Virus record (IMG/VR): IMGVR_UViG_3300026512_000002 | Location: 163,697-227,696 of that record | DNA: 64,000 nucleotides | Reading direction: 5' to 3' (one strand) | In this document: positions 9,396-58,724 of the stretch, in pieces | Layout: every line of letters starts with the position of its first letter | Position numbering within the stretch: position 1 is the stretch's first letter | Made by a program: the position numbers and the translations under genes | Notes under the pieces: model-generated | The model's input: only the letters and a program-made list of their open reading frames with translations | Database searches by the model: none | Told to the model about the DNA's origin: nothing

Positions 9396-12203
9396 ATGGA
9401 TAATATATTTACAGGTAAATCAACTTATGATATAGAATCATATATTTATGAACTTTCGACTAAATTTTTTAAAAACCAAGATGGTACAAATATACCTGTT
9501 AATAAATTACGTAATGGTCTATATGGTTGGTTGTCAGAAACTCAGAGTAATTTAGCTTTCAACAGTATATCTACGAAATCAGGATTATATGAGGAAAATT
9601 TTATAAACACAGCTAAATTACCTCAAACCATATACAATAATGCTATTATGTATAATTTTAATGTCAATTTAGCAGAACCGGCGATACTACCAGTTAAATT
9701 AAATATTAAATTCGTAGATATTATTAACATCAGTAGGCGTAGCGAACAAGTTTTTAGAATAAGTAATAGTACTGTATTTCAAACTAACGGTATGAATTTT
9801 AAGCTAAGATATGATATTATCATAGAATATAAATTGATAGGTTCCAATATAACTGATGGATCATTATCAGCGACATATGATAAATCTACTGAACAATTTG
9901 ACACATTTGATACATATGATAAACTAATACCTATCAATTACAACCCAGATACTGGCATGGTAACATTAGTTGTGGATCTATATCAATTGGAAAAAACTGT
10001 TACTACTTTTGAGTATATTGAACAAGATTCATTTTTAAATAAATCATTTAAAGTTAATTTTTTTGACCAATTATCTAAATTCAGAGTTTTTTATAAGGAA
10101 ACACCTTATTCCGAAAGAATTGAATTAAACACATATTTGGGTTCCGAAGAAGTTAATTTTAATCCAAATGAAAAAAAATGTAATTATGAATATAATGGCA
10201 CGAATAGTTTAAATATATTATTTGTTAGTAATACAGGATTTCGACCTAGTAATAATTCGATAATAGAAGTAGAAACATATACTACAGTAGGTTCATCAGG
10301 TAATATTAATTATAATGGGTCTCTCATACCTGTATTTGACAATAAATTTTACTATGATTTAAATATTACTACTACTCCAATAGGTGTGGGTTCTGGTGGA
10401 TTAGATAAACCATCACCAAATGAAATAAAAGCAAGACTATTAGCATGGATACAATCTAAAGGTGAAATGATAACAGATACTGATATTGATAATTATATTA
10501 AAAGTATACAATCACAATATTTGAAAAACAATAGTAAATTTACTATGACTAAAGACCAAAACGATTTATTAAGTCGTTCATATAAATCATATGTATTACT
10601 AAAAGATAACGATAATATAGTTATACCTACTACAACAGTTGATTTGTCATTAAGTTACACAATAATCGAAAGTAATGATATGGATTATTTTAAAAAATCT
10701 ATGGATGGTTCAAAAGTATTGATACCATCCGGTAGTTATATAGTTTTAAAAAAAACCGTGCAAACAAATATGGAAGGTTATGTTATAGCATATAACTATA
10801 GCGATTATACTGTCTCACAATATCCTGAAGAAAACCTTTTTAATGAAAATGATATGTTACGGGGTAGTGATAACTGGTTATCATATTATAGAAAATATCC
10901 TGACGCATATACTGTTTATAAAACACCATATGATATATTAATAGATTCCGTACCGTTTTTAAGAGCAGTGTATTATCGAACATCATTAGATGATACATAT
11001 CAAGTTAATAAATATAATATGAACCATTTATTTGGAAAAAGTTTCACAATTACTGAATTTGATATATATAGAAATTCTATGAATGGTACGGATAATGATA
11101 CTTATACATTATCATTTGAACTAAACACTAATGTTAATAAAAAATATATCAATAACAATATATTGTCTGGACCCGACAGAAACCAAATAAATGCAATAAT
11201 ATTATTTTTCACCAAAGATGATGATGGTAATAGAACATATTATGGTTTTAAAAACTGTGTGTTTGACGAATCTTCTAACGGTAATCCGTATAAATTCTAT
11301 TCCGAATTTAAAACATTGTATAAAATGGATGAATATGATTCAACATATCTAAAGTTATTTAAAATAGATAGTGAAACTTCTACAGTTGTTAGTAATACAT
11401 TACAAGAAGTTAAAGTGCCTCGTGACGTAAACATATCAATTTTAGTTAACTATGATCCAAATGATGGTAATTCTATAGAAAGCTATTTTCAACCAACTAG
11501 TGATAATCAACTACAATACGCTTCTAATACAACAGCACCGGATTTATATGATACTGCTATAGATGGTTCTGGAACAACAATAGGGTTAGTAAATATAATA
11601 AATGTTTTAGAAGTTGAGTCTGTTGAACCTGTTAAGATTTTCGTATCATTAGGCAACGTAGTATCATCAAACATAACATATACTGGTCAATCTTATGTGA
11701 TAAAGGAATTACCATTAATAACAGCTGATTATATAGAAAATGATGAACGGTTTCAATTCTTTATAAATGCAATAACTAACTATGAAAATATGTTTAAAAC
11801 AATACTATCAAGAATAGATGGTAGTAGTTCACTTAATTTAAAATATTTTAACACTTGTGGTAAATCTAGTAATTTTACAATTAATAATACTGATATAAAT
11901 ATTTCTTGTGTTATAGGTTTACGAGAACAATATACCCCAATATTAGAAAAAAATATAATTAAACACATAGTATCGTTTATGAATAACATTAATGATATTG
12001 ATATAAATAGATTTTCATTTTCTAATTTATCAACATCATTAGAAAATAATTTTCCACAAATATCAAGCGTTTTCTTAAATGATATAAACGGTCTTAGAGT
12101 ATATGAAATTGATGAAAAAAATGTTAGTGATATTCCGGAATATTTGAATATAGGATATGATTATATAAACAAAAAATTTAAAGTTAAATTAATTTTTAAA
12201 TAA
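9396..12203 (+). CDS. Baseplate wedge protein (T4 gp6-like)
   Basis: 935 aa. FINTAKLPQTIYNNA, YTTVGSSGNINY and GSGGLDKPSPNEIK motifs are typical of gp6/BaseJ-like wedges; fits the gene context. Confidence 0.65.
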   Translation: MDNIFTGKSTYDIESYIYELSTKFFKNQDGTNIPVNKLRNGLYGWLSETQSNLAFNSISTKSGLYEENFINTAKLPQTIYNNAIMYNFNVNLAEPAILPVKLNIKFVDIINISRRSEQVFRISNSTVFQTNGMNFKLRYDIIIEYKLIGSNITDGSLSATYDKSTEQFDTFDTYDKLIPINYNPDTGMVTLVVDLYQLEKTVTTFEYIEQDSFLNKSFKVNFFDQLSKFRVFYKETPYSERIELNTYLGSEEVNFNPNEKKCNYEYNGTNSLNILFVSNTGFRPSNNSIIEVETYTTVGSSGNINYNGSLIPVFDNKFYYDLNITTTPIGVGSGGLDKPSPNEIKARLLAWIQSKGEMITDTDIDNYIKSIQSQYLKNNSKFTMTKDQNDLLSRSYKSYVLLKDNDNIVIPTTTVDLSLSYTIIESNDMDYFKKSMDGSKVLIPSGSYIVLKKTVQTNMEGYVIAYNYSDYTVSQYPEENLFNENDMLRGSDNWLSYYRKYPDAYTVYKTPYDILIDSVPFLRAVYYRTSLDDTYQVNKYNMNHLFGKSFTITEFDIYRNSMNGTDNDTYTLSFELNTNVNKKYINNNILSGPDRNQINAIILFFTKDDDGNRTYYGFKNCVFDESSNGNPYKFYSEFKTLYKMDEYDSTYLKLFKIDSETSTVVSNTLQEVKVPRDVNISILVNYDPNDGNSIESYFQPTSDNQLQYASNTTAPDLYDTAIDGSGTTIGLVNIINVLEVESVEPVKIFVSLGNVVSSNITYTGQSYVIKELPLITADYIENDERFQFFINAITNYENMFKTILSRIDGSSSLNLKYFNTCGKSSNFTINNTDINISCVIGLREQYTPILEKNIIKHIVSFMNNINDIDINRFSFSNLSTSLENNFPQISSVFLNDINGLRVYEIDEKNVSDIPEYLNIGYDYINKKFKVKLIFK

Positions 12204-13023: not shown

Positions 13024-13860
13024 ATGAGTAAACAACTTTTAAATGAAAAAATGTCAAAAGGAAAAGCTTTAAAATTATATAATTCGGTAAAAACCGAATT
13101 TTGTAACATGTCCAATGATGTTGAAAAACGAACATTGCTAAATAACTTAGATAAGATTGAAAAAGCTATGACTAAAGGTTCTGCTGGGAAAATTGGTCTA
13201 GCACTAGGTTTATTAGCAGCAGCTGGTGGAGCTTATGCTGCTTACAGTGCTCATGTACATGGTTCTGATGCTGAACATGAAATGTCAGGTATACGTGATA
13301 TGGATCAAATTGAAAACCCTGTAACTGATCAACTGGAACCTGAAGCAACAGCTAAAACTGTTCCAGTTTTCAAAAATAGAGAAACTGGTAAATATTTCTT
13401 AAATCCTAAAGATTATACTATGGATAAATATAAAAAAATCAAAGCATATAGAGCTGATGGTAAGTGGGTTGGTAGAGAACAATTTGAGAAAATTTCTAAA
13501 AATCTTAAAGGTATAAATACCCAACGTGCTTTAAATAATGCTAGGATAATGAAACAAGGTATCCAATATGATCAAGCCGCAAAAAGAATTAAAGAATACA
13601 ATCAAAATAATATTATTAAGCGAGATATGTTATCTAATTTAGTTAATAAATATCATAATAAACAAAATGCTGGTATCGCTACTGGTGTAATTGGTGGTAT
13701 TATAGCTGCTGGTAGCAACTTGTTAAAAGGTGGCGATCGTACCGAAATAACTAAAGCTAAAGCAATCGTAGGTTCAATGAAAAAATATATCTCAAAAGTA
13801 AAACCAGGTAAACAAAAGTGTGCTGATTTTGATAAAAAATTTAAACATTACTTCATATAG
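13024..13860 (+). CDS. Cassette protein, copy 1 (Cys flank - hydrophobic helix - variable insert - hydrophobic helix - Cys flank)
   Basis: LYNSVKTEFCNM...GKIGLALGLLAAAGGAY ... GVIGGIIAAGSNLLKGG...KVKPGKQKCADFDKKF; leader ends in LLNE. Confidence 0.75.
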   Translation: MSKQLLNEKMSKGKALKLYNSVKTEFCNMSNDVEKRTLLNNLDKIEKAMTKGSAGKIGLALGLLAAAGGAYAAYSAHVHGSDAEHEMSGIRDMDQIENPVTDQLEPEATAKTVPVFKNRETGKYFLNPKDYTMDKYKKIKAYRADGKWVGREQFEKISKNLKGINTQRALNNARIMKQGIQYDQAAKRIKEYNQNNIIKRDMLSNLVNKYHNKQNAGIATGVIGGIIAAGSNLLKGGDRTEITKAKAIVGSMKKYISKVKPGKQKCADFDKKFKHYFI

Positions 13861-14450
13861 GAGAATATGATGATACATACACTTAGTGAAAATTCTAGTA
13901 GTAAATTATTAAACGAAGGTTTTTTTGAAAATAAAAGACTTAGGTTATATAATTCAATAAAAATAAGTTTTTGTAACATGGATACAGCTGTTGATAAACA
14001 AGTGTTAATAGACACATTGAAACAATCATCTACAGCATTAACAAAAGGTAAAGCTGGTAAAATTGCGTTAGGATTAGCTGGACTAGCGATAGGTGGTATT
14101 GGTGCATACGCTTCTTATAAAGCTGGTATGGATGTTGATTCCCTTAATAAGGATTTAGATGCAATACCGACTACCGCAAATGATGGTAGTAATAGTTTAG
14201 CTAATATGGCTAATGCTACTGCACGATCATTATATGGTAGACATGTAGCTGATGCTACAAATATAGAAAATGGTGGCAAATTGGCAATAGGTGTAGGTGC
14301 ATTACTAAGTATTGTATCCACTGTAATAAGATCTGGAAATAGTTCCGATATCAGTAGATCTAAAGCAATAATAGACACTATTATTCAATATATTTCAAAA
14401 GTAAAACCAGGTAAACAAAAGTGTGTTGAGTTTGATAAAAAATTTAAACA
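13792..14450 (+). repeat. 56-nt direct repeat pair, 13792-13847 and 14395-14450 (2 mismatches)
   Basis: TCAAAAGTAAAACCAGGTAAACAAAAGTGTG(C/T)TGA(T/G)TTTGATAAAAAATTTAAACA. Confidence 0.9.
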
Positions 14451-15630
14451 ATTTTTTATTAATGAAAGTTATAATAGTGATATCAGCAATAGTGATGATA
14501 ATGTTGTGGTAGAAATGGATGTTGTAAGTGAAGGGATATCTAATCTATTAGCCCTATATAATGATGCGTTACCAGAGTCTATCTCAGATAATATTCTTAA
14601 TGAACTATTAACAGACGCATTGTTTTTGTTCAACGAAACAGTTAATTTTGAAAATGTTAGTGAGTTTACAACACCTACATTCATAGAGGATTATGCTTTT
14701 ATGACAGAAGGTGGAGTGTTATCTGAAAACACCAAAGACACTATTACAAATACAGGTGAATTGGCAACATATAAGAAAAACATCGTATCAGCAATATTTG
14801 AAAATACTTCAGACAACGATAGTGTCGAAATCAACTCCTTTACTGTTAGTAAAATTATATTAGTGGAGATGTTAGATGGTTTAGGTTTACTACAAAACAT
14901 ATCTGAGTCTAACCCACAAATTATCACAGATACTGTGTGTAAAATGAGTTTATTAGATGAAGCTAGTAAAAGCAAACCATTCAGATTGCTCGGTTCTATT
15001 AGAAAAGAATTTTGTCATATGAAAACTACAAAAGATAAAGAAAAATTATTGAAACGACTAGATGGGTCTGTTAAAGCTTTAAGTAAAGGTAAAGCTGGTA
15101 AAATTGCTTTAGGATTAGCTGGACTAGCAGCGTTAGCAGGCGGGGCATATATGGCCTATGATGCAATGAAAAATGGTGAAAATATAAAAGATTCTGAAAA
15201 TGGGCTTTTAAGCACACTTAAGAATGCGCATACTAGAGCAGGATTTACTCAACAAGAAACATCTAATGGTAAAACTATTACTAAACATTTTTTAACTAAA
15301 ATGGGTGGTGTTGCTGAACCTACAACTAAACTTGGTTACGAGGCCAATAACCTTAGTAATAAAGCGATATCACACTTATCTGCTAATAAAGATAATATAA
15401 AGAAAGCTTTTTCGGGAGCTATAAAAGATGAAGAAAATAGAGCACTTACTGGAAAAACAATAGCGAAAGCAGGTGCTATTGTTGGACTAACATCACTGTT
15501 ATTAAAATCCGGTAATAAGAAAGATATATCTGAATCTGAAAAAGTTATCAAAAACGTAATATCTTATGTTAAGTCAGTAAAACCTGGTAAACAAGATTGT
15601 GTTGACTTTGATAAAAAATTTCTAATATAA
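13867..15630 (+). CDS. Polyprotein-like ORF: cassette copy 2, acidic spacer domain, cassette copy 3
   Basis: Two more copies of the same flanks, separated by about 175 acidic aa with many x-x-E sites. Confidence 0.75.
   Translation: MMIHTLSENSSSKLLNEGFFENKRLRLYNSIKISFCNMDTAVDKQVLIDTLKQSSTALTKGKAGKIALGLAGLAIGGIGAYASYKAGMDVDSLNKDLDAIPTTANDGSNSLANMANATARSLYGRHVADATNIENGGKLAIGVGALLSIVSTVIRSGNSSDISRSKAIIDTIIQYISKVKPGKQKCVEFDKKFKQFFINESYNSDISNSDDNVVVEMDVVSEGISNLLALYNDALPESISDNILNELLTDALFLFNETVNFENVSEFTTPTFIEDYAFMTEGGVLSENTKDTITNTGELATYKKNIVSAIFENTSDNDSVEINSFTVSKIILVEMLDGLGLLQNISESNPQIITDTVCKMSLLDEASKSKPFRLLGSIRKEFCHMKTTKDKEKLLKRLDGSVKALSKGKAGKIALGLAGLAALAGGAYMAYDAMKNGENIKDSENGLLSTLKNAHTRAGFTQQETSNGKTITKHFLTKMGGVAEPTTKLGYEANNLSNKAISHLSANKDNIKKAFSGAIKDEENRALTGKTIAKAGAIVGLTSLLLKSGNKKDISESEKVIKNVISYVKSVKPGKQDCVDFDKKFLI
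14044..15128 (+). repeat. 44-nt direct repeat pair, 14044-14087 and 15085-15128 (1 mismatch)
   Basis: AAAGGTAAAGCTGGTAAAATTGC(G/T)TTAGGATTAGCTGGACTAGC. Confidence 0.9.
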
Positions 15631-15651: not shown

Positions 15652-15704
15652 ATCGATAATAGTAGTGGATGATCATATATATGTCATCCGCTATTATTAT
15701 CGAT
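15652..15704 (+). other. 21-bp RNA stem-loop with G-U pairs
   Basis: ATCGATAATAGTAGTGGATGA pairs with TCATCCGCTATTATTATCGAT; the two non-Watson-Crick positions are G-U on the plus strand. No U-tract. Confidence 0.7.
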
Positions 15705-25705: not shown

Positions 25706-26323
25706 ATGAAAATTTTAAATAACTACATTGCAATAGAAGGCATTGATGGCGCTGGTACAACAACACAGGTCTTAAAATTAGAAGAATTGATAAAGAAAGA
25801 TGATGATATAGATTATATTGTTACCAATGAACCTGCTAATTCTAATATAACCAAACTAATCCGTCATAAATTAAATAGCGGGTACGCTATTAAGCATCAA
25901 TATGAATTAGCATTATTATTTGCTGCTGATAGATTAGAACATCATCATAGAACAATTATTCCAGCTATTGAAAGTAACAAATTGATAATAAGTGATAGAT
26001 CGATTATGTCGTCATATGTTTACCAATCAGTATTCACAAACGATCTTACATGGATCAAATCAATAAATAAATATGCTATTATGCCAAATATCATCATATA
26101 TTTGGACATAGATGCTGAGATAGCAATGAAAAGAATGCTAGGTAGAAATAAATTGGATTCTTATGAAAAAATTGATTTACTGGTTAAATATAGAAAGACA
26201 TATATAGATCTTATAGATAAAATGAAAAATGATACAAACATTTTAATATTAGATGGTACTTTACCAGTAGATGATATCACTACAAAAATATATAATATTA
26301 TATATAATAAAAATAGACATTGA
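25706..26323 (+). CDS. tmk: Thymidylate kinase
   Basis: YIAIEGIDGAGTTTQ (P-loop variant), TNEP, LLFAADR, IISDR; start ATG 25706 after GAGG. Confidence 0.92.
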   Translation: MKILNNYIAIEGIDGAGTTTQVLKLEELIKKDDDIDYIVTNEPANSNITKLIRHKLNSGYAIKHQYELALLFAADRLEHHHRTIIPAIESNKLIISDRSIMSSYVYQSVFTNDLTWIKSINKYAIMPNIIIYLDIDAEIAMKRMLGRNKLDSYEKIDLLVKYRKTYIDLIDKMKNDTNILILDGTLPVDDITTKIYNIIYNKNRH

Positions 26324-26348
26324 CAAGTAATTAAATGTAGGAGTGTTT

Positions 26349-26972
26349 ATGAAAATTATTAAACAACATGTTACAATATTAAAAGACAATATTGATGAAA
26401 GTGACGAGGATTTAAAAAAAAGAATTTATTTGAAATTAGAAAAAATTGCTAGAAACGCATATGCTAGTGAACATAAAAATCCAAATAATAATTTATCTAT
26501 AACAATAGATTTTTTAAAAAAAATCATGAGAAAAAAACATTTAGGTATATTAGAACATGTTCAGGTGTCATTTGAAATTGTTGCAAACAGAGCAATATTA
26601 AATGAATTAGTTAGACATAGAATGGCTAGTTATGTTCAGAACTCTACTAGATATATAAGATATAATGATGATATTGAATTTATTGAACCATACGGATTTG
26701 TTGAAAATAGTGTTGAGTACAATATATGGCTTAAAGCATGTAGACAGTCAGAACATGCATATCATAAACTACTTAATAATGGTATCAATCCAGGTAATGC
26801 TAGAGATGTGTTAAACTTATCATTAGCTTCAAAAATCATAGTTACAATGAATTTACGTTCATGGTTACATTACCTAGAACTTAGATTAGCCAAGACAGCT
26901 CACCCACAAATTAGAACAATATCTAATGAAATAAGTGAAATATTACATGGAATGTTACCTATAATATTTTAA
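26349..26972 (+). CDS. thyX: FAD-dependent thymidylate synthase
   Basis: H.GILEHVQVSF, ELVRHRMASYVQNSTRY (RHRx7S), VTMNLRSW.HYLELR...AHPQIR. Confidence 0.95.
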   Translation: MKIIKQHVTILKDNIDESDEDLKKRIYLKLEKIARNAYASEHKNPNNNLSITIDFLKKIMRKKHLGILEHVQVSFEIVANRAILNELVRHRMASYVQNSTRYIRYNDDIEFIEPYGFVENSVEYNIWLKACRQSEHAYHKLLNNGINPGNARDVLNLSLASKIIVTMNLRSWLHYLELRLAKTAHPQIRTISNEISEILHGMLPIIF

Positions 26973-26981
26973 AAGGACATT

Positions 26982-27152
26982 ATGAATAATAAAAAATTAT
27001 TTAAAATGATAGACACCAATATGGTTATATGTAATAAATGTGGTACTAAAAATAAAGGCTATGCAACAATAACAAGAAAAAATAAATTAGGTCATATAGT
27101 ATACTATAACGGTTATTGGTGTAAAAATTGCGGCAAAGAATCATTTAAGTGA
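26982..27152 (+). CDS. 56-aa zinc-ribbon protein (not in track)
   Basis: MNNKKLFKMIDTNMVICNKCG...YWCKNCGKESFK; SD AAGGA; two CxxC motifs. Confidence 0.7.
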   Translation: MNNKKLFKMIDTNMVICNKCGTKNKGYATITRKNKLGHIVYYNGYWCKNCGKESFK

Positions 27153-27174
27153 AATATTATCAAAATGTAGTGAT

Positions 27175-27209
27175 AATAGGGTTAATGAACATTAACCCTA
27201 TTTTTTTTT
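27175..27209 (+). terminator. Intrinsic terminator between convergent genes
   Basis: AATAGGGTTAATG / CATTAACCCTATT followed by a T-run. Confidence 0.85.
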
Positions 27210-27297
27210 AGAGATTTATATACAAATATGTAGTTTAGTATTATCGGTTTCAATTGTGTGATTATTGATAATTTTATATGATAAATCGGATTAGATA

Positions 27298-27486
27298 TTA
27301 TAACCTATGAGAAATGTTATCAACACCTGTTTTAACAATTCTTCCAATTGGTTTATCACTAGTGTTGTTTAATGCTACATAAGCTATGGATGCACCTCTA
27401 TCTGTATTAATGGTTAAAAGTATACCTTTTTCACCTGTATCTTTTAATATAACAGGTATGTTGATTGTTGTATTCATATCAATCAC
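27298..27486 (-). CDS. Small hypothetical protein
   Basis: 62 aa, SD AGGAG, 4-nt overlap with the upstream stop. Confidence 0.6.
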   Translation of the reverse strand: MIDMNTTINIPVILKDTGEKGILLTINTDRGASIAYVALNNTSDKPIGRIVKTGVDNISHRL

Positions 27487-28208
27487 TCCTTAACATTGTT
27501 TAATGTAGTGTTCGTCTCATAATTTTTTATTATTATTTCATACTCTTTAAGTTTAAAGTCACATATAATATTTTGATTATTAAATATTGACTTAATTTTA
27601 TTCAGAACATGTATAGTATTCTTATCTAAATCTGTAGTGTCGGGTACTGTGATTATTGTAACATTATCATATTCTGGATTATCAGTGTATGACACGTTAA
27701 TATCTTTATTAGTAGCAGCGATTGTTAAAATAGCTATATTATACTCATCACACATTATAGAATTTTTTAATATCTTGTTAGCACGTCTAATTTTATCATC
27801 ATATGATAAACTATTTAATATATCAATATATCTCGATTCAAGAAAATTAACAATATCATCATATACCGGAAATCCGAATCTATATAATCTTTCAGTATGA
27901 GCCATAATCATATCAACACCTTCCACATATATTGTATGTAATGTATTTATTTCATCGATAAGCTTGGACACACGTTTATTAAAATTATCAATATCAATAT
28001 TTTTTAAACTGTCAATATATATTAATGATAGTAATTCAGCATATTTATCAATATCAACATAATCATATTGTTCTATTATATCGAGATCGTTTTTATACGT
28101 ACGCCTCATGCTACTTATTAATATTGTTTCTCGATATATAACAAAAGTTAATATTACCCCAATTACTATAGTGGTTATACTAATAATTAAATAAGTTAAA
28201 AATGTCAT
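27483..28208 (-). CDS. Membrane-anchored hypothetical protein
   Basis: N-terminal hydrophobic FLTYLIISITTIVIGVILTFVIY. Confidence 0.7.
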   Translation of the reverse strand: MTFLTYLIISITTIVIGVILTFVIYRETILISSMRRTYKNDLDIIEQYDYVDIDKYAELLSLIYIDSLKNIDIDNFNKRVSKLIDEINTLHTIYVEGVDMIMAHTERLYRFGFPVYDDIVNFLESRYIDILNSLSYDDKIRRANKILKNSIMCDEYNIAILTIAATNKDINVSYTDNPEYDNVTIITVPDTTDLDKNTIHVLNKIKSIFNNQNIICDFKLKEYEIIIKNYETNTTLNNVKE

Positions 28209-35500: not shown

Positions 35501-38500
35501 TTATAATATATTATACTTCTCATTATTGTTATTAACAATCATGTTATTTAATTGATACATTATTGAACTCACATCCATACCATTATTGTTATTATTCTGT
35601 CCTCTACCAATATTTCGACTATTAGCGCTATGTAATATAGCTTCTATAATTTTCAAATTAGTGGTTGTTATAGTACCGTTTATATTTTTGAGTAATTTTT
35701 CAATAGTGTTCTCATTATTGTTTTTAGCATCACTGTTTTCAACAACAAGATTATTATTATTATCATTTTTCATATATATTAAATTGAGAATTTTAACAAT
35801 TTTATTTAATACACCAAGCATAATATTATCATCAGATGTATTTGGTATATATTTATCATTATTGTTATTATACTTATGACTGTTATAACTTATTTCTATA
35901 TCGCTAGCATCTCCTTTTTGAAAAGTTTCAACATTTCGCTTCTTTTTGTTTGAACTAACCAATGCTCCATTTTCATTATCTTTACTAGGATCATATTTTT
36001 CACCAGTTTCACTATATGTGTTAGCATCCTTTTTCAATAGTTTTGAAGCATCTTTTTCTAAAGCAGCCATTTTTTTTTCAGATAACTTTTTCTTCCCATT
36101 ATTTTTAATAGGTTCATCAATATCCTTAGATATTCTATCAGTTATAACAGTACCTTTTTTATCATTATCAGTAGGTTTAATTTTATGTTTACTGTGGAAT
36201 ATATTATACAATGCCAGTTCTTTATTATTGTCAGGTTTTGTAAAAAAATCATGTCTTATTTGACCATAACCTTCATCTCCAGCATGTTTAGCATACTTAG
36301 CTAGTTCTGTGTGCCATTCTTCAAAATAAGATTTATTAGATGGTTGATGTAACCTTGAAAGAGGTCTAAATAAACCATGTTTTTTAAATAATCCTAATTT
36401 ATCAGCAATTATTAAATCGACACCATTGGCATCTACAGCATACCCAACATTATGAGCCGAATTACCAGGCACGGCTGCTCTAGGATTAGGAACTTTATGA
36501 TATTTCCTTATATAATCATTCATGTCTTTATATGATAATTTATCACCTGGTTTTAGATTAAAGGCGAGTCTAGCCTGTTTCTCTATATCTCTATATCCTG
36601 AATTTACATGTATTTTACGACCCGTTAAATTATAGTAATCACTAGCCATTTCTAAAAACGGTTTTCGTAATTCAGGATTAACTTTTTCAAAACTAGCAAT
36701 ATTACCATCTATAGGTAATTCATTTTGTAATAAACCATATTTGTGTTTTTTAATTTGATTCCATTGGCCATCACTATTTTGTCTAAAACCAAAATTCTCG
36801 GTCAATTGAGTCGAATATTTATTATAATCTTTAGTTGATAAATCCGCAGCCCTGGTAATATTAACTTTTTCAACTTTACCAGTTTTTTTATTTTTAATAT
36901 TTTTAGTTACATAGTTACCATTTTTATCTTTCACAGCAACTCTTTTATTTAACAATGTTAGCAATTGTTTATTATTTAAATTTTTAGAAACATCTCTATC
37001 GCTAGAATAATTATTAGAATCAATATTATTTCCACCAGATATTTTTTTGAGAATGTTATCAAATTTTGTAAAAACAGTATTTGTTGTCGAAGCATTATAT
37101 TGCATCATTTTACCATCATTATCACGTATATTGGTAGTATATGTATGTGATTTGACATGTTCACGTTTAATATCTTCTAACAACTCTGCACGTGTTGGTA
37201 ATTTTATTTTCATTATAGTATCTATTTCAGCATTGAGACTATCTATATTTGCAATAGTAACTTTATCAATTTTTCTAAAATAATTGCTAATACGTTTTCT
37301 CACTTTAAGTATGCGCTTTAAACTGAGTTCAATAAGAGTATCCCATTTATCAATAACATTTATTATATCTTTATCAGGAAAATCTTTGTTTAATTTAGCA
37401 ATATATGTTGTAAACGCATTTATATTAGTAGCATATATATTAATTCTACTTTCAGCTAGTGTAAGATCTGTTCTTTTATTAGCTACACCATATGTATCTA
37501 TTTTAAATTGCTCATCATCATATATATCTTTTGGTTTAGTAACTGCTTCTTTTTTTGTATCCTCAACTTTCTTTTTAGAAACAGAAGATTTTTTTTCTTT
37601 TTTAATTTTTTTTACATGACCATTTATCAACATAGGTTTAAAATCATATGTTTTAGCATCTTCTTTTTTTTCAGGTATAAAACTTTTGATATATTCCAAA
37701 CCTTTAGTAAACCATGTTTTATGAGTTTTCTTATATTCTACTACTAACTCTTTTCTAAAATTATCTACCCAATCAACATCTATGACTTCTCGCCTATATT
37801 TTTCAACAATACCTATTGATACTGTTTCAGCATCATCAATAAATAATGTTTCACTATTATAATCTTTAACCAATTTATTTTCATAATCAATTAATTTCTC
37901 AATATATTTTTCAGCTAACTTAACACCTTCAACCTTATACCAATTATCATCATTCAACTTCAATAATTCCAACTCATCTGTAAAACGATCAATATAATTA
38001 GTAACAATGTCTATATATGTTTCCATTATTTTCTTAGATAATTTATCAACAACTGCTCTATTTGTATCCCAATGTTGTTTATTATATTTATCAACAGCAC
38101 GTTCTAAATCACGATATATTTTCTTAGAAGTGACATTATTTCCTAAAACATTTTCTTTCATAGCATTTATAACTTCATCAGTAGCAGCAATATCTGTTTT
38201 GATTTTCTTTTCTTTATCTTTAACGGTATTTGTTACAAATTTAATATTAATCTTAGAAGGATCTTTATATTTATCTATAAACTTATCTATCTCAACATAC
38301 GATTCCCGTAAATTATAAATATTTGTAGTATTTTTTAATGTATCCAAGTATTTTTTTGCTTCATTAATAATATTCATATATGTATTATATTTATCCCACA
38401 TTTTAACTAGAACAGTTTCTTTATTCATAACATTTAACAATATATCAGAATATTTTGATATCATATTACGTAATATTGCACCATAAATATCGATTTGTTT

Positions 38501-41500
38501 ATCAATACTTATTTTATCAATAAAGTCATGATCACCACGTGTTGTTTTATTAATTTTTTTCAATTTTTCATATTCATTATCATATTCATTAGTTTCCTCA
38601 TAATCTAATTTTCGATAACTATTACTCATATCTGTTAGTTTATTTTTAATATTATCTACCCATAAAACATTATCATTATATATATCACAATCTTTTTCAA
38701 CTCTAATAAATAATTTTTTTATATTATTAATAGTTTCATCAGTAATAGATTTATCTGGCATTTTATAATACTCTAACATTTTTTCAATATATGATTCATA
38801 TAAACGTTTCTTTTCTAATTTTTTAATACTAGTATTAGATATATTTTCCATATTTTTAGATATTTTATCACCTACTATTCTAATATACGAACTAAGTTGA
38901 ATTTTAAGTCGTTTAATAAGATCTAATCTCATTTGTAAAGTTAACCCACCTTTAATGTAATTTTCGCTATTAGATATTTTTTCAATAGCAACTTTATTAT
39001 CTAAAACATTTTCAACAGTCTCTTTTTTAGGAATAATTTTATCAAACGATAATATACTACTTATTTTATTTTTAACTATAAGCCGTCTTTGATATATTTT
39101 CAGAAGCTCATATGGATCTTGTAAACTATCAATTTTTTTAAAAATAGCTGGTAGTTTTAATTTCTGCAACATAGCATCAAGTTTTTTCGTAGCAGCTAGT
39201 CTTTTAATTATTTTTTCTCGACCATAATCATTTCTCATACTATATACATTATTTACTTCTGATATAACATCCATAAAGTTAACTTTATTAAGGATATCGA
39301 TAATATCACCATAACTATCTTGTATCATGGACAATAATCTATTATTATTATCAACATCAGCGACATTGGTACTATTAGATATTTTGTTCTTAATATCAGT
39401 TAAAATATTATTATAACTGTCTTTATATAAATATATTTTTTTAGCTGAGATAACTAATTTTTTTCTAATACTTAATATTAAATCCGAAGACATCATGGTT
39501 AACCTTACTTCATCTTCTGAAGCACCTACAGCACTATTGTAGTATTTAAGATTCTTATTCTCTTCTTTAGTTAACACACTATTATCTTTCAATATATTTT
39601 TAACAATATCGGCCTTCTTATATTTACCAAAATCTTCGACATATTTTTTAATAAATTCGTCAAAATCTACTAATTGAATATCTCTAAATTTATTAACAAT
39701 ATTTATATATTCAGATGTCGTAATTTTATCAGAATATGTCAATCTCACAATATCATTATATAATTTTAATAACATATTATATGCTGATCGCAAACTTTCT
39801 AAAATATCATTTTTATTTTCGGCACCAATCTCTTTAATATTAATCAGTTTACTAATATTTTTTTTCAATGACAATAATTTACTTTCAACCATTACTTTAA
39901 ATTTCTTAAGCTTAGTTTTTAATTCAACAGATACATTATCTTGTAATTGAACCAACTTTTCTTTATCATCAGCATTTTTACTATTTTTAAGTTCCACTAT
40001 TTCATTATCAGTATTCTTTAATTTAGATAAACCATCTGATATAAATTTATTAATATCTTTAACACTCGATTTTGTATATGTTGCTACGTTCGCATATGTT
40101 TCTTTTAATATATTTGTAATTGAAGTATTAAGTAATTTCTTATATATGCGCCTAGCATTATTCATAACACTATCTGATATTTTTTTTAAACCTTTAATTT
40201 TAACAAGTTCTATTTTTCTAATATCTAATTCGGAAACATACGCTGTTAAACGCGATATCATTTCCCTACCTTCAGAGGTACCTGATTTCACTTTCATAGA
40301 TTTTATTTTATTTTTAACATAAGTGATTTTATCATCAATATCCCTTATACCTTGTTCAATTTCTGCTTTATACTTACTTGTTTTAATATCAACTAATTCT
40401 TTAACACTTGAAACTGCTTCTTTAACACTAATTAAATCTATATTTCTGACATCTTTTACAAATTTTTTTAAATCTAAACCACCAATATCTTTAGCTTTGT
40501 TTAATATTTCACTTGTTTTATTTTTAAGCAACATTGATACTTCTTTAATATATTCTTTCACACTATTATTGGTTAATGATTTATCTGTTAAAGAATTTTC
40601 CAATTTATCTAAAAGTATTTTGGATTCATTTATTACATTCTGTATAAAATTACGATAGACATTAGGTTTTCCTGTAGAACTATTATATGTTGAAGTCAAA
40701 GCAGTTATATAATTACGAACTTTCACTATCAATAACGCTATCTTATTTAAAGCATCAGAAGTGATACCACCACCACTCATTATTGTTTTAGATATTTCTG
40801 ACAATTTTTTATAGTCACCTCTACGATACATTTCTATAGCTTGCTCAGATTTAGCAAAAGCATTCAAACCTTTCATGTTTAAAAAAATATCAGATCTATT
40901 AACAACTTTTTCAGCTAAATGTGGTGTAAATGTTCTTCCGTTCAAAACATCTTCTAGCTCTTTAACAATTTTTTCACCACGTTTAGCACCATCTAAATCC
41001 TTCATTTTAATTAAACCAGATATTTTTTCTTCCATTAAACTAATTTGATACTTTATTAAATACATATATGATGATCGTAGCCTTAACGCATATTTACGTT
41101 GTTTCAAAGACCCATCGTCAGCTTCTGCAAAATTTTTAAAATCGGAAGCAATAGAAACTCTAGTAGCTATTTCAGTATTTGCTCTACGATCTATTAAACT
41201 ACCTTTTTTATCTCTCATATATAATAGATTATTTATCTTAGTAAAAGTTTTTTTAACACTAACACCTAATTCATTAGCACCGGTTTTAGCATACTTACCC
41301 CATAATATAATGAATATATTATATAAACTCCAACCTTCTTCAGCTTTACGGTGAACACTATCACTTTTTTCACCATCTAGTTCACCAAAATAAAATTTAG
41401 CATTATCAACCATATTACTAATAACACCATCACCACTCCTAACTTTTTTATAATCATCAATATTATTTACAAAATATTTTTTATCTTTTTTAGGAAACAA

Positions 41501-44500
41501 CGCTGGTAACAACACTGTTGTTATAAATGTTGGTAGCTTCATACCTGTTTTTCTTTTTTCTTCAAATAACATAGACCATTTACTAAAGTCTCTAGTAAAC
41601 ATAACTATTTGTTTTTCATTAATTGCAAAATAATTCATATAGTTATTTCGTTGATTTGTAGTGAACCACTTCTTATCCATAGACATTAACATGGTTTCAA
41701 ATTCATTTTTCATATTTATCGCTTCATCGGCATCTATCTCACGACCAGCAAATTTATCTAATTTAACAGAAGTATATGAAGCAATTTTAGTAGCCTCATA
41801 TCCGCTACCATATTGACCTTCAATATTTTTGAAAATAGATATGTATTTATACGGATTTGATTTTTTCTTTAATATTTTAACATCTCTAATAAATTTGTGA
41901 ATACCCTTTTTGGTTTCAGCATCTCTTATTTTAGCAAACTCATAAGCACCAAAACCAACATATCCTGCAGCAGCAAACCATCTTACACCAGGTATTGTCA
42001 TACCTATGGATAATGCTGTTCTAATACCATCTGACTTAGCTTGTTCACCTCTTTTTTCAGACAAGGATTGGATTTGTAAATCTAATTCATCTACCAACAT
42101 AGGTCTCAAACTAGGATGCTTAGCAGCAGCTACTAACATATTGAACAATTCCGGTTGTTCAGCATATTCTTTTTTCAACGCACCTATATTATAACTATGT
42201 ATATTACTTATATAATTCTTAGTTTTACTCAACTTATCTATTAATCTTGTGGTAAGTGACCATCTTTTATAACCCTTATACATACCATATAATGCTAAAC
42301 CAACACCGGCCCATCTTAAAGCCACTTTTAAACCAGCACCACTTTTAAAACCAGTCACAACACCTGATAAAGTGTTTTTAAAACCAATAAACATCTTACC
42401 TATTCTAGCACTAGTACTGGTTTTTGCAACACCCAATCCAGCTTTAATCTTACGATATAATAGTACCTGAGAAGCGAAACCCGCAACTGAAGCAACATTG
42501 TCAACAATACCTGAATCATCTGTAGAATTATTATTAGATAATGATTTGATTTTGTTTGATCCGGATATAACACCATATCTATTTTTTGATTTACCAATAC
42601 TAGTTTTACCATTAGTGTTATCAGTAAAATCATCATTATATTTAGATTTATTAATAGCATTGCGAGCGGCATCAATATCATTTTTAGCTTTTATTTTAGC
42701 TGATTCTTCTTTCTTTTCTCTTTCTTTTTCTTTTAAGTCTTCTCGTTTAATATTATCATTCACAAGTTTATTATCATTGGCCACCTGTGCTTCACTAGTA
42801 CCTGTTATAACTGCTTTAATTTCCTCTAATTTATCAGTAATCTTATTTGTATTCTTATTATCATTAGATACAATGTCTAATTTTCCATCTTTTGAAAAAA
42901 ATGCACTATTTTTGTCATCACCAGCAACATTTTTCTTATACCATTCCTCAGCTTTCTGCTCATTTTTACGTATACCTGTAAGACTAAACGCCCAATACCT
43001 TTTTTTACTAGCCATAACATCTAATTTTTCTTTAAACGCCTTCCACTCTTTTACAGTAAAAAAAGAATTTTTCTCACCATACAGTTTTTTACCTTCCGGT
43101 AACTTTCTGTTATAATCTTCTAATTCGGCACCAGTTATCTTACCCAATTTAGCTAAACGTAAAGCCTTCTGTTCAAAACTAACTTTATCATGAGCATTTA
43201 TTCTTTTAAATAAAGTTGCTGCTCCACCAGCAGTACCAGTAACTACACCAGCAACCTTACCTAGACCTCTCAATATTGTTGATATCCAACCGCCGACACC
43301 TCTATGTCTCATCATATTTTTTTCAACATGTTCAGCATGTTTATAAACTTCAACATATCCTTGATAACCTATATTACCAATTATTTTATCACGGATCTGT
43401 GGTTCTAACAAATTAACTCGTGTAAGCAACCCAGCACTAATACGTTTCTTTAACCAATAAACATCCCAACTATCTTTCCATAAATGTTTAAAATATATAC
43501 GCATTCTATCTGTTAAACGTTCACCAATTTCCCTATTATCTAATTTATATAATGCTTCATATAATGATTTGGATTTATCTCTCGATTCCGCCTTAGCAGC
43601 AATATCATATACTCTCCGTAGCCTAATACTGCCAATAGCACCCCCACCAAATGTATCTGTTAATTCGGCTTTTATGTCAGAGTTTTGTAATTTTGATAAT
43701 GTTAACTCACCACGCTCTGCCATCTTCATATATTTTTTAAATTCTTTACGAGCAGCTCTAGCATCAAAAAAATGTAATTTATTCCAATATAACCCACTCG
43801 ATTTATCATTTCTATTAATCTTTTTCTTTTTATTAATAGCTTTCCACATATTGTCACGATCTTTCTTTATCTTAATAGTTGCTGCTAATCTTCTTAATTT
43901 TTCAAAACCATCCTCACCAAATGATTGTATTAGCGACAACCTAACATCTTTTTTATTAAAATCGTCTTCAACCATAAAACCGGTCTTTATCTTACGAATA
44001 GCAAAACGCCAATGAACTTTATCCAAAGCATATTTACCAACCTTATATGCTAAAAATAACGGTGGTGCTGTTACAGCAACAGCTGTTTTACCAACCGGTA
44101 TCAATACTTTCTTTAATGTTAACGCATCTTCTTTAGATATAGCAACACGCATATATCCATCGTAGTAACTCTTACCTTTTTTAGGACCAAATGTTTCTAA
44201 TATATGTTTTTTATTTTTTATCAAATATGCTGGTGTTATAAATCCACTTTTAACACCAGCCCATAATTTAAGATGTAATTTTTTAACATCTATATATTTA
44301 TCTATTTCCTCATCAGCAATACCTACTAAATCAGATGTTAAACTTTTATTAGCATACTTAGTTTCACCACTTTCAACCTGTTTCTTTAAATCAACAGCTC
44401 GATCATACAATTTTTCATATTTTTTCTCACCAAATTTCTTAGATAAATATGATTTACTTTTTTTAAGGGTCTCGACTCTTATTCTACCACTATCAACAAA

Positions 44501-48747: not shown

Positions 48748-49073
48748 TTAACCTCCAACAGTTTATCGTTTTCCTTAACATATAATTTGTTATGTTTAAT
48801 ATCATGTAGAACAGTTTTACCTTCTTTTAAATACATGTGAGTTTTTCGCAATATATTATAATCATATACTTCTAACTCAATAACACTCCTAATAAGTTTT
48901 AACCCATTTAATTTAGCAAAATCTTTCTTATTTTCCAATCTACGCAACTCTTTTTTACCATCATTTATTTTTTTTTGCAATTTACGAATATTCATTCTAT
49001 ATTCAGATATTTCACTAGAATACTTTTCCAACAATTGACTCAATTCATTAATTTTATCATTATTATTTTCCAT
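48744..49073 (-). CDS. Hypothetical protein with N-terminal coiled coil
   Basis: 109 aa, overlapping both neighbours. Confidence 0.65.
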   Translation of the reverse strand: MENNNDKINELSQLLEKYSSEISEYRMNIRKLQKKINDGKKELRRLENKKDFAKLNGLKLIRSVIELEVYDYNILRKTHMYLKEGKTVLHDIKHNKLYVKENDKLLEVK

Positions 49074-50925: not shown

Positions 50926-50936
50926 ATTTCCTCTTA

Positions 50937-52847: not shown

Positions 52848-52874
52848 ACTGAACCTCATTAGATATCCGGTATA

Positions 52875-52883
52875 ATAATATAT
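52875..52883 (-). promoter_or_regulatory. Putative early motif ATATATTAT
   Basis: Upstream of the polymerase operon. Confidence 0.4.
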
Positions 52884-52912
52884 ATGTAACAAAAAAACAA
52901 GTTTTTTTTTCA

Positions 52913-58187: not shown

Positions 58188-58724
58188 ATGAGCAAAGCTA
58201 GCGTTTACAAATGTGTTCTACCAAAAACAGGTTTTATACCAATTCTAAGAGTATATGGTCCACTAGATCAACCATTCATATGTACAAAAATGCAATATGA
58301 GAAATTATTGGCTATGGGTTATCCTATTACAATAGTTGATAACGATCCTAAACTTAAACTAAGAAAAGAATTAGGTTTAACAATACCTAAAGATATTAAT
58401 ACTACTACATCACCAGTAAATAATGTTGAAACTAAAATTACTTCTACTGAAAAAACTAAACTAAATCAAACAAATGAAACTGAAAAAACTAAACTAAATC
58501 AAACAAATGAAACTGAAAAAACTAAACTAAATCAAACAAATGAAACTGAAAAAACTAAAACTGTTGAAAAAACACCATATGATGATTTAAAACCATACGG
58601 TGTCGGAAAATTACGCAGATTAACCTTAGCTCAATTGAAAGAATTGTCTAAAATTGAAAATTTGGAAGAACGCGACACTAAAGCTAAAAATATTGAACAA
58701 ATTTTAGATAAATATAAAAAATAA
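58188..58724 (+). CDS. Protein with 11-aa repeat linker and C-terminal HeH / Rho-N-like domain
   Basis: GFIPILRVYGPLDQP N-domain; LRRLTLAQLKELSK...TKAKNIEQIL C-domain. Confidence 0.6.
   Translation: MSKASVYKCVLPKTGFIPILRVYGPLDQPFICTKMQYEKLLAMGYPITIVDNDPKLKLRKELGLTIPKDINTTTSPVNNVETKITSTEKTKLNQTNETEKTKLNQTNETEKTKLNQTNETEKTKTVEKTPYDDLKPYGVGKLRRLTLAQLKELSKIENLEERDTKAKNIEQILDKYKK
58446..58559 (+). repeat. 33-nt tandem repeat, 3 copies plus a partial (TEKTKLNQTNE)
   Basis: ACTGAAAAAACTAAACTAAATCAAACAAATGAA, identical copies. Confidence 0.95.

What the first reader, a model, noticed from the sequence alone, without database searches (positions are those of the whole stretch)
13792..15128. Cassette flanks are mosaic, suggesting recombination or gene conversion between copies
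SEEN: copy 2 shares its C-flank with copy 1 (56 nt, 2 mismatches; 13792-13847 vs 14395-14450). It shares its N-flank with copy 3 (44 nt, 1 mismatch; 14044-14087 vs 15085-15128). The copy 1 N-flank and copy 3 C-flank are clearly more diverged, including at synonymous sites. INFERENCE: simple serial duplication would not easily give this reciprocal pattern; recent exchange at the flanks would, and would provide a way to shuffle inserts.
Basis: partly seen in the sequence, partly recalled or inferred. Interest (0 to 1): 0.65.

Follow-up and report, generated by a model that had tools for sequence, protein, structure and literature searches.

The report
Patchy gene conversion between phage paralogues
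Three old, neighbouring copies of an orphan helical protein module in an uncultured jumbo phage share two short stretches of near-identical DNA. Recent short-tract exchange between adjacent copies is the likeliest cause; that process is well known, and nothing here shows a cassette-shuffling system.

Summary

**The locus.** It lies in a 227.7-kb, 27% GC jumbo-phage contig from a hydrothermal-vent metagenome, distantly like phage AR9. It holds three tandem units of an orphan all-helical module. Each unit has a conserved N flank, a variable insert and a conserved C flank. Copy 1 is its own gene. Copies 2 and 3 are fused through an acidic linker into one 587-aa ORF.

**The evidence for exchange.**
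- Outside the two cores, synonymous sites are saturated.
- Inside the cores, the named pairs use the same codon more often than codon bias predicts: 16/16 against 10.5 expected, and 13/15 against 7.5 expected.
- Simulations that keep the proteins and redraw the codons give P = 0.0006 and 0.003 (jointly 0 of 5,000).
- Copy 1 encodes the same N motif with chance-level codon matching, which argues against a nucleotide-level constraint there.

**Best reading.** Short-tract gene conversion between adjacent paralogues at their most conserved motifs.

**Not supported.**
- Insert shuffling. No silent donor copies, site-specific recombinase, reverse transcriptase, relatives or visible variants were found.

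Protein function remains unknown. Interest is modest.

The parts
13024..13860 (+). ORF1 = copy 1 (278 aa): N flank, 138-aa insert, C flank. A ribosome-binding-site-like AGAGGTG lies upstream.
13867..15630 (+). ORF2 (587 aa as listed). The 586-aa product in the protein libraries (P0003, sequence not checked against the window) matches a start at the second ATG, 13870. It is copy 2 + acidic linker X + copy 3 in one frame.
13867..14460 (+). Copy 2 unit (198 aa). It ends with the same C-terminal motif as copy 1 but has no stop codon.
14461..14943 (+). Linker X, about 161 aa, acidic (29 D+E against 5 K+R). It has 0 stops in frame against 9 and 29 in the other frames, so it is coding. It has no homologues.
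14944..15630 (+). Copy 3 unit. It keeps an in-frame ATG AGT that aligns with copy 1's start (M-S..L-L-x-E).
13174..13214 (+). N core of copy 1 (motif K-G-x-A-G-K-I, start of the first Gly/Ala-rich hydrophobic helix). It encodes the same motif as copies 2 and 3, but codon matching is at chance level.
14044..14087 (+). N core of copy 2, near-identical to copy 3's (exact runs of 23 and 20 nt).
15085..15128 (+). N core of copy 3. It lies 1041 nt (347 codons) from copy 2's, in the same codon phase.
13792..13847 (+). C core of copy 1 (motif S-K-V-K-P-G-K-Q-K-C..F-D-K-K-F), including a 31-nt exact repeat at 13792-13822.
14395..14450 (+). C core of copy 2. It lies 603 nt (201 codons) from copy 1's, in the same codon phase. 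The 31-mer unitig here has depth 40, twice that of its neighbours.
15571..15621 (+). C core of copy 3. It is 82% identical to copy 2's, and the differences are mostly replacements.
14452..14457 (+). T6 run at the end of copy 2. The frame reached by one extra T reads K-Q-F-F-Y, stop, stop, then a cluster of stops. That would end copy 2 at the same length as copy 1's C terminus.
15652..15704 (.). Inverted repeat (21-nt arms, 90% complementary, 11-nt loop) just after ORF2's stop. It is a likely end-of-operon hairpin (inferred).
   Evidence: I5

Best explanation
The locus holds three tandem, anciently diverged copies of an orphan, all-helical protein module. The copies share 35-43% amino-acid identity and their silent sites are saturated. 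Each copy has about 75 conserved N-terminal residues, a variable insert of 48-138 aa and about 60 conserved C-terminal residues, with two Gly/Ala-rich hydrophobic helices bracketing the insert.

Two short tracts (about 45-64 nt) were recently homogenised by non-reciprocal homologous exchange between physically adjacent copies. This could be short-tract gene conversion or template switching during replication or repair. Copy 1 exchanged with copy 2 in the C core, and copy 2 with copy 3 in the N core. The tracts sit on the most conserved protein motifs, where enough nucleotide homology survives to start pairing. Copy 2 looks mosaic simply because it is the middle copy and has exchanged once with each neighbour.

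- **Shown:** the identities, the saturation elsewhere, the codon-level excess, the restriction to adjacent pairs, and the same codon phase of the repeats.
- **Inferred:** the mechanism of exchange, its recency, and that unequal crossing-over at these in-phase repeats would give in-frame chimeras and copy-number changes.
- **Not shown:** any exchange of inserts, and the protein's function. The function may be membrane- or virion-associated, judged only from the hydrophobic helices and the position downstream of virion genes.
For: - **Identities.** Exact as stated. Self-BLAST gives E 6e-21 and 1e-13.
- **Baseline outside the cores.** Identical residues use the same codon 54 times against about 58 expected, summed. 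That is saturation.
- **Inside the cores.** Copies 1-2 in the C core: 16/16 same codon against 10.5 expected (P 0.0006). Copies 2-3 in the N core: 13/15 against 7.5 expected (P 0.003).
- **Whole-flank simulations.** Proteins kept, codons redrawn: P 0.0006 and 0.003, and both together in 0 of 5,000 runs. Results hold with local codon usage and with within-copy synonymous shuffling.
- **Internal control.** Copy 1 encodes the N motif (10 of 14 residues the same) with only chance-level codon matching, 5/10 against 4.9 expected. A nucleotide-level constraint on that motif is therefore unlikely.
- **Adjacent pairs only.** The non-adjacent pair 1-3 shows no excess (longest run 24 nt, P 0.30).
- **3SEQ-like test.** P 0.02-0.03 with copy 2 as the child.
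- **Same phase.** Repeat spacings are 603 and 1041 nt, both multiples of three.
- **Not an assembly artefact.** Independent k=31 unitigs of the source run reproduce the sequence with 0 differences. The shared 31-mer node has depth 40, twice 20.
- **Other patches in the same genome.** Similar short near-identical patches occur inside other diverged repeats, for example 72 nt at 97% inside a 592-aa fibre-like ORF.
Against: - Only three sequences and no outgroup or relative, so the direction and timing of exchange cannot be established.
- Few truly free silent sites are involved. The N core has 5 variable silent sites at residues conserved in all three copies. The C core is rich in K, F and D codons that match often by chance.
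- In the C core, copy 3 also shows some codon excess (12/13, P 0.02 uncorrected). Some nucleotide-level or codon-context constraint there cannot be excluded.
- The 3SEQ-like test is only marginal.
- No RecA, RecT or RusA gene was found on the 89%-complete contig. There are only sub-threshold P-loop hits. The recombination machinery is therefore unknown and may be the host's.
- No population variation is visible, but only contigs of one run were available.
Confidence: 0.6

Rival explanations
1. Purifying selection on the two most conserved protein motifs, plus the strong A/T codon bias of a 27% GC genome, gives the nucleotide identity with no exchange. The 'mosaic' is copy-specific protein divergence: copy 1 in the N core and copy 3 in the C core.
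For: - The tracts coincide with the most conserved residues.
- Codon bias is strong: K, F, D and Y match 73-79% of the time by chance.
- Copy 3's C-core differences are nearly all replacements.
- Three sequences give a star tree, so the sharing pattern alone is uninformative.
Against: - Simulations that keep the proteins and apply the codon bias rarely reach the observed runs: P 0.0006 and 0.003, jointly 0 of 5,000.
- Codon matching elsewhere in the flanks is at expectation.
- Copy 1 encodes the N motif with different codons.
Confidence: 0.15
2. A nucleotide-level function overlaps the coding sequence in the cores, such as an RNA structure, a regulatory site or a recombination or packaging signal. 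That function holds the silent sites constant.
For: In the C core all three pairs show more codon identity than expected: 16/16, 12/13 and 11/13. Copy 1's C core lies 20 nt upstream of the next gene's start.
Against: - Copy 2's C core is not followed by a gene start, yet it is the near-identical one.
- The N core is not conserved at silent sites in copy 1.
- Neither core matches elsewhere in the genome beyond the three copies.
- No RNA fold or Rfam search was run on the cores, so this rival was not tested directly.
Confidence: 0.1
3. Copy 2 arose as a chimera in one event. A tandem duplication, with one breakpoint before copy 1's C core and the other after copy 3's N core, would create a middle gene with copy 3's N flank and copy 1's C flank.
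Against: - A duplication would leave the whole duplicated segment equally similar. Here similarity collapses to about 56% nt, with chance-level codon matching, immediately outside the 45-64-nt tracts.
- The stretch between C core and N core is 196 nt in one case and 634 nt in the other, and they are unrelated.
- An old chimera would not explain silent-site identity today.
Confidence: 0.05
4. The conserved cores are the working handles of a diversification system. Frequent unequal or reciprocal recombination at them reshuffles inserts and copy number in the phage population.
For: - The repeats are direct, in phase and up to 31 nt exact, so crossovers would give in-frame chimeras.
- Conserved motifs flanking hypervariable segments are known recombination points in T-even tail-fibre adhesins (PMC3157838).
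Against: - No chimeric or deleted variant is visible, and the depth of copy 2's unitig equals that of its flanks: 21 against 19.8 and 20.2.
- The inserts share no similarity with each other or with anything else in the genome.
- No donor cassettes, recombinase or reverse transcriptase were found.
- No relatives are available to show swapped inserts.
Confidence: 0.1

Closest known systems
Intragenomic gene conversion (concerted or patchy evolution) between duplicated bacterial and phage genes, for example tufA/tufB in Salmonella (from my own knowledge, not tested here)
   Same: Non-allelic copies in one genome carry tracts of near-identity, silent sites included, against a diverged background. 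The tracts are short and sit in the most conserved parts.
   Different: Here the tracts are very short (45-64 nt) and the copies are otherwise saturated. The genes are orphan phage genes, and no orthologues are available for the classic paralogue-versus-orthologue test.
Motif-mediated recombination in T-even tail-fibre adhesins (gp37/gp38: conserved glycine-rich motifs between hypervariable segments; Tetart 1996/1998 as cited in PMC3157838)
   Same: Conserved short motifs flank variable segments. [quoted passage not shown] The setting is a phage structural-gene neighbourhood.
   Different: Those exchanges are documented between different phages and alter a known receptor-binding protein. Here the exchange is between tandem copies in one genome, the protein is helical with no tail-fibre similarity, and no swapped insert has been seen.
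Programmed cassette variation (Neisseria pilE/pilS, Borrelia vlsE; from my own knowledge)
   Same: Conserved flanks around variable cassettes, with gene conversion as the mechanism.
   Different: Those systems have one expression site plus many silent donor cassettes. Here all three copies lie in open reading frames of one operon, and no silent copies exist in the genome.
Tandem paralogue arrays next to virion genes in jumbo phages of the AR9/PBS1 group (from my own knowledge for the general pattern)
   Same: The locus lies just downstream of homologues of AR9 g213 and g212 in a virion-gene neighbourhood of a distantly AR9-like jumbo phage.
   Different: AR9 has an unrelated gene (g211) at this position. 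The module has no homologue in any library searched.

Membership tests
Intragenomic gene conversion between paralogues | Two or more homologous copies in the same genome | tested here: met
   Three units, found only at this locus
Intragenomic gene conversion between paralogues | A tract whose identity, silent sites included, exceeds the background divergence of the copies | tested here: met
   16/16 and 13/15 same codons against 10.5 and 7.5 expected. Simulations give P 0.0006 and 0.003. The background is at expectation.
Intragenomic gene conversion between paralogues | A change of nearest relative along the alignment (breakpoints) | tested here: inconclusive
   The 3SEQ-like walk gives P 0.02-0.03. 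With three sequences and no outgroup there is no topology to contradict.
Intragenomic gene conversion between paralogues | Paralogues within a genome more alike than orthologues between genomes | not testable with these tools
   No relative in the phage records, IMG/VR, JGI metagenomes or the protein libraries of 1.84 and 5.8 billion entries
Expression-site / silent-cassette antigenic variation (pilE/pilS, vlsE type) | A reservoir of promoterless, partial donor cassettes | tested here: not met
   tblastn of every flank and insert against the whole contig finds only the three copies
Site-specific shufflon or invertase systems | Inverted recombination sites plus a serine or tyrosine recombinase | tested here: not met
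   The repeats are direct. No Resolvase or Phage_integrase match on the contig. The contig is 89% complete.
Diversity-generating retroelement | A reverse transcriptase plus a template/variable repeat pair differing mainly at adenines | tested here: not met
   No RVT_1 match. The inserts are unrelated in sequence and length.
T-even gp37/gp38-type adhesin with motif-mediated shuffling | Homology to tail-fibre or adhesin proteins | tested here: not met
   No PHROG or Pfam tail-fibre hit. The model is all-helical and no fold match rises above noise.
T-even gp37/gp38-type adhesin with motif-mediated shuffling | Documented chimeras with swapped variable segments | not testable with these tools
   No relatives. 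Only contigs of one run were available.
Pfam DUF1206 | A match above the gathering score in the family's transmembrane-pair domain | tested here: inconclusive
   One stretch in copy 3 only (ORF2 aa 397-434) scores 28.1 bits against a cut-off of 26.2 and covers 38 of 70 profile positions. ORF1 (copy 1) gave no Pfam family and the copy 2 part of ORF2 gave no DUF1206 stretch. The match is probably compositional (a Gly/Ala-rich helix).

The most novel reading that the evidence does not exclude
The in-phase conserved cores are used as recombination handles that reshuffle variable inserts and copy number of an orphan membrane- or virion-associated protein family in a vent jumbo-phage population. This would be a tandem, donor-less cassette system working by homologous exchange, comparable in effect to motif-mediated adhesin shuffling in T-even phages but in an unrelated helical protein.
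Probability: 0.1. Interest if true: 0.6.

Novelty: new member of a known kind. Interest (0 to 1): 0.3.

Why it matters
If the reading is right, this is a clean small example of patchy gene conversion in an uncultured jumbo phage. Otherwise saturated tandem paralogues stay connected only at their most conserved motifs. It shows how to separate exchange from codon bias when no relatives exist, and it predicts in-frame chimeras and copy-number variants that long reads could detect. It does not open a new kind of system, because gene conversion between duplicates and motif-mediated recombination in phage genes are both established. The protein family itself is new: there are no homologues among 1.84 billion cluster representatives. 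Its function is unknown, so the biological payoff is limited for now.

Tried and rejected
- **Homologue searches (all empty or self-only).**
  - PHROGs and Pfam on both ORFs.
  - tblastn against 50,697 phage records.
  - Peptide-pattern scan of IMG/VR.
  - Word search of 5.8 billion proteins with copy 1 and with linker X.
  - Profile search of 1.84 billion representatives. It returned only the two ORFs plus three weak Gly/Ala-rich helix hits.
  - ESM Atlas search by sequence features.
  - A degenerate DNA pattern for the C motif in IMG/VR and in JGI metagenomes. Only the source contig, Ga0256842_1000004, matched.
- **Synteny with AR9.** The gene at the equivalent position (g211) is unrelated.
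- **Neighbouring ORFs as hidden paralogues.** hhalign probability under 1% for all.
- **Structure.**
  - The 587-aa protein folded alone gave pLDDT 39.
  - Copy 2 with the 3-row alignment gave pLDDT 63 and pTM 0.61, with the flank helices at 71-91.
  - Foldseek against PDB and BFVD, the Atlas shape search and VIA-align wide gave nothing above helical-bundle noise (best Z 6.6).
- **Reads.** Only one public run holds the stretch, it is probably the source, and it is kept as contigs. It shows no variant and no joint. This is no evidence of absence.
- **Single chimeric tandem duplication.** Rejected, because similarity does not extend beyond the tracts.
- **Assembly artefact.** Rejected as unlikely, since independent unitigs agree and the repeat node has double depth.
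- **DGR, shufflon and silent-cassette models.** Rejected.
- **Recombinase genes on the contig.** No RecA, RecT or RusA; only sub-threshold P-loop hits.
- **Literature.** A search for phage paralogue gene conversion gave nothing specific.
- **Operators' rules.** No alternative genetic code was needed.
Full report
**Where the window lies.** The window is the right-hand 64 kb of a 227,696-bp virus record. CheckV rates the record 89% complete. It is JGI contig Ga0256842_1000004. The only public run that holds the stretch is a hydrothermal-vent metagenome, which is probably its source. The DNA is 25-32% GC. The 935-aa ORF just upstream (9396-12203) is about 27% identical over 98% of its length to g212 of Bacillus jumbo phage AR9/PBS1. 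It also matches Listeria, Staphylococcus and Yersinia jumbo phages. ORF 7614-9380 matches a virion structural protein family. So this is an uncultured, distantly AR9-like jumbo phage, and the locus lies at the edge of a virion-gene block. In AR9 the equivalent position holds an unrelated gene, g211.

**Anatomy of the locus.**
- ORF1 (13024-13860, 278 aa) is copy 1.
- ORF2 (13867-15630, 587 aa) contains three parts in one frame: copy 2 (aa 1-198), an acidic linker X (about 161 aa, 29 D+E against 5 K+R) and copy 3. A 586-aa product in the protein libraries (P0003; its sequence was not checked against the window) matches a start at the second ATG, 13870.
- Each unit has a conserved N flank of about 75 aa. 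It carries an F-C-x-M motif and then K-G-x-A-G-K-I, which leads into a Gly/Ala-rich hydrophobic helix.
- After the N flank comes a variable insert of 138, 48 or 86 aa.
- The conserved C flank of about 60 aa starts at a second hydrophobic helix, which is weaker in copy 3. It ends in Y-I-S-K-V-K-P-G-K-Q-x-C-x-x-F-D-K-K-F.
- The copies are 35-43% identical in protein sequence.
- Copy 3 keeps an in-frame ATG AGT that aligns with copy 1's start.
- X has no stop in frame against 9 and 29 in the other frames, so it is coding.
- A 21-nt-arm hairpin follows ORF2's stop.
- The three units are the only ones in the genome, and the inserts match nothing else in it.

**The observation.** Both identities are exactly as reported: 56 nt with 2 mismatches and 44 nt with 1 mismatch. 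In a self-BLAST of the genome they extend to 64 nt at 95% and 57 nt at 91% (E 6e-21 and 1e-13). They are among the strongest repeats outside the genome's tandem arrays.

**Is it more than protein conservation plus codon bias?** This is the key question, for two reasons.
- The tracts lie on the most conserved motifs.
- Three sequences form a star tree. 'Copy 2 equals copy 3' means only that copy 1 changed, and 'copy 1 equals copy 2' means only that copy 3 changed. Differing protein constraints could produce that pattern with no recombination. Only neutral sites can discriminate.

I built a codon alignment and took codon usage from 143 long ORFs of the genome.

| Region | Pair | Same codon / identical residues | Expected | P |
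|---|---|---|---|---|
| Flanks outside the cores | all pairs summed | 54 | about 58 | saturated |
| C core | 1-2 | 16/16 | 10.5 | 0.0006 |
| N core | 2-3 | 13/15 | 7.5 | 0.003 |
| N core | 1-2 | 5/10 | 4.9 | chance level |
| N core | 1-3 | 5/10 | 4.9 | chance level |
| C core | 2-3 | 12/13 | 8.4 | 0.02 |
| C core | 1-3 | 11/13 | 8.8 | 0.14 |

To correct for having picked the windows after seeing them, I simulated the whole flanks with the proteins fixed and the codons redrawn.
- The longest run with at most 2 mismatches averages 26.8 nt for pair 1-2 and 24.7 nt for pair 2-3. The observed runs are 56 and 45 nt, P = 0.0006 and 0.003. Both together occurred in 0 of 5,000 runs.
- The non-adjacent pair 1-3 is ordinary (24 nt, P 0.30).
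- Local codon usage and within-copy synonymous shuffles give the same answer.
- A 3SEQ-like walk over informative sites is only marginal, P 0.02-0.03. Site counts were 69 for 1=2, 61 for 2=3 and 50 for 1=3.

- Copy 1 encodes the N motif with different codons. This argues against a DNA- or RNA-level constraint on that motif.
- Copy 3's C core is not diverged at silent sites. Its differences from copies 1 and 2 are replacements, so the C-flank 'mosaic' rests on protein changes plus the perfect codon identity of pair 1-2.

**Alternative origins.**
- *One chimeric tandem duplication.* Breakpoints before copy 1's C core and after copy 3's N core would yield exactly this pattern. But the whole duplicated segment should then be similar. 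Instead, similarity falls to about 56% nt and chance-level codon matching directly outside the tracts. The stretches between the cores (196 and 634 nt) are unrelated.
- *Assembly artefact.* This is unlikely. k=31 unitigs built independently from the run reproduce the sequence with no differences. They break precisely at the 31-nt exact repeat (13792-13822 = 14395-14425). That node has depth 40 against about 20 for the three neighbouring unitigs, as expected for a true two-copy repeat.
- *Programmed systems.* The repeats are direct, and the contig has no serine or tyrosine recombinase and no reverse transcriptase. It has no silent donor cassettes either.

**Most likely mechanism.** The best reading is short-tract, non-reciprocal homologous exchange between adjacent copies at the only places where enough homology survives. 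This could be gene conversion or template switching. The middle copy has exchanged once with each neighbour. This step is inferred. No RecA, RecT or RusA gene was found on the contig, only sub-threshold P-loop matches, so the machinery may be the host's or unrecognised.

The repeats are in the same codon phase: their spacings are 603 and 1041 nt. Unequal crossing-over would therefore give in-frame chimeras and copy-number changes. That is a prediction, not an observation.

The one run available is held only as contigs. It shows equal depth across copy 2's unitig (21) and its flanks (19.8 and 20.2), with no variant and no joint. That neither supports nor excludes rare recombinants.

Other diverged repeats in the same genome also carry short near-identical patches. 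Examples are 72 nt at 97% inside a 592-aa fibre-like ORF, and 60 nt at 93% in a repeat protein. Patchy homogenisation may therefore be a general habit of this genome.

**What the protein is.** The function is unknown.
- No family, sequence or fold match stands above noise.
- The Pfam DUF1206 hit (28.1 bits against a cut-off of 26.2) covers one hydrophobic helix of copy 3 only and is probably compositional.
- AlphaFold2 on copy 2 with the three-row alignment gives an all-helical model (pLDDT 63, pTM 0.61). The N- and C-flank helices are confident (71-91) and the insert is not.
- There are two moderately hydrophobic Gly/Ala-rich helices per unit (Kyte-Doolittle 1.4-1.75) and one conserved cysteine in each flank. 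The locus also sits next to virion genes. These features are compatible with a membrane-inserting or virion-internal protein whose two flanks pack together. This is conjecture.

**Comparison with known systems.** Mechanistically this is ordinary intragenomic gene conversion between duplicates. The nearest phage analogy is recombination within or near conserved motifs that flank hypervariable segments in T-even tail-fibre adhesins (PMC3157838). Membership of that family fails, because there is no adhesin homology. The pilE/pilS type, the shufflon type and the DGR type also fail on defining features tested here.

**Verdict.**
- Recent exchange at the flanks is the best explanation (confidence about 0.6).
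- The claim that this shuffles inserts is untested and currently unsupported.
- Novelty lies only in the orphan protein family and the setting, so interest is modest.

**Operators' rules.** No alternative genetic code was used.

Noticed in passing
window 14431-14530 (T6 run at 14452-14457): ORF2 looks like a gene fusion. In the frame reached by one extra T, copy 2 would end K-Q-F-F-Y, stop, at the same length as copy 1, followed by a cluster of stop codons. Either a real 1-nt change fused copy 2 to X and copy 3, or there is a homopolymer-length error or variation. The unitigs of the source run agree with T6.
   Followed up: partly
window 14926-14949: Copy 3 keeps an in-frame ATG AGT aligned with copy 1's start, and the upstream bases resemble copy 1's ribosome-binding region in decayed form. 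This suggests copy 3 was once a separate gene.
   Followed up: partly
protein P0006 (478 aa, metagenomic): A weak hit of the family profile. The protein consists of four tandem repeats, each with A-G-K-I-G-V-G-V-G-G-A-A-A-L-G-G-A-G-Y-G-L-Y, close to the N-core helix motif of copy 1. This may be a distant relative or convergence on a glycine-zipper helix.
   Followed up: no
G000:C1 26398-26469 vs 26971-27042 (outside the window): A 72-nt direct repeat at 97% identity, 573 nt apart, inside a 592-aa fibre-like ORF (25847-27625). Both copies encode the same T-A-S-N-G-L-T-K-T-G-N-D-I-Q-L-G-G-T-L-T-G segment. This is another short homogenised patch in a diverged internal repeat.
   Followed up: partly
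G000:C1 102048-102584 (- strand, outside the window): A 178-aa ORF made of repeats of about 24 aa (L-S-D-E-A-E-Q-K-L-L-T-T-P-K-L-V-E-K-Y-I). It contains a 60-nt patch at 93% identity between non-adjacent repeats.
   Followed up: no
G000:C1 1-1950, 68300-68930, 104750-108210; window 63669-64000: Large tandem-repeat arrays: periods of about 60 nt near the left end and about 72 nt at 104.7-108.2 kb. A further array of about 45 nt period runs into the right end of the contig. The contig may therefore end inside a repeat rather than at a true genome end.
   Followed up: no
G000:C1 28674-28970 and 115164-115460 (outside the window): A perfect 297-nt inverted repeat 86 kb apart, with a further 163-nt match at 88% nearby.
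   Followed up: no
window 35501-48055 (- strand): A 4184-aa ORF with an endolysin-like stretch near its C terminus (aa 3785-3931, phrog_2649, E 2e-6). It is a candidate giant virion or tail protein with a lytic domain.
   Followed up: no
window 49063-50940 and 50937-52913 (- strand): DNA polymerase matches are split over two adjacent, overlapping ORFs of 625 and 658 aa. This is a split polymerase gene or a frameshift.
   Followed up: no
window 58446-58559: A perfect tandem repeat with a 33-nt period (an 81-nt self-match at offset 33) inside or near ORF 58188-58724.
   Followed up: no
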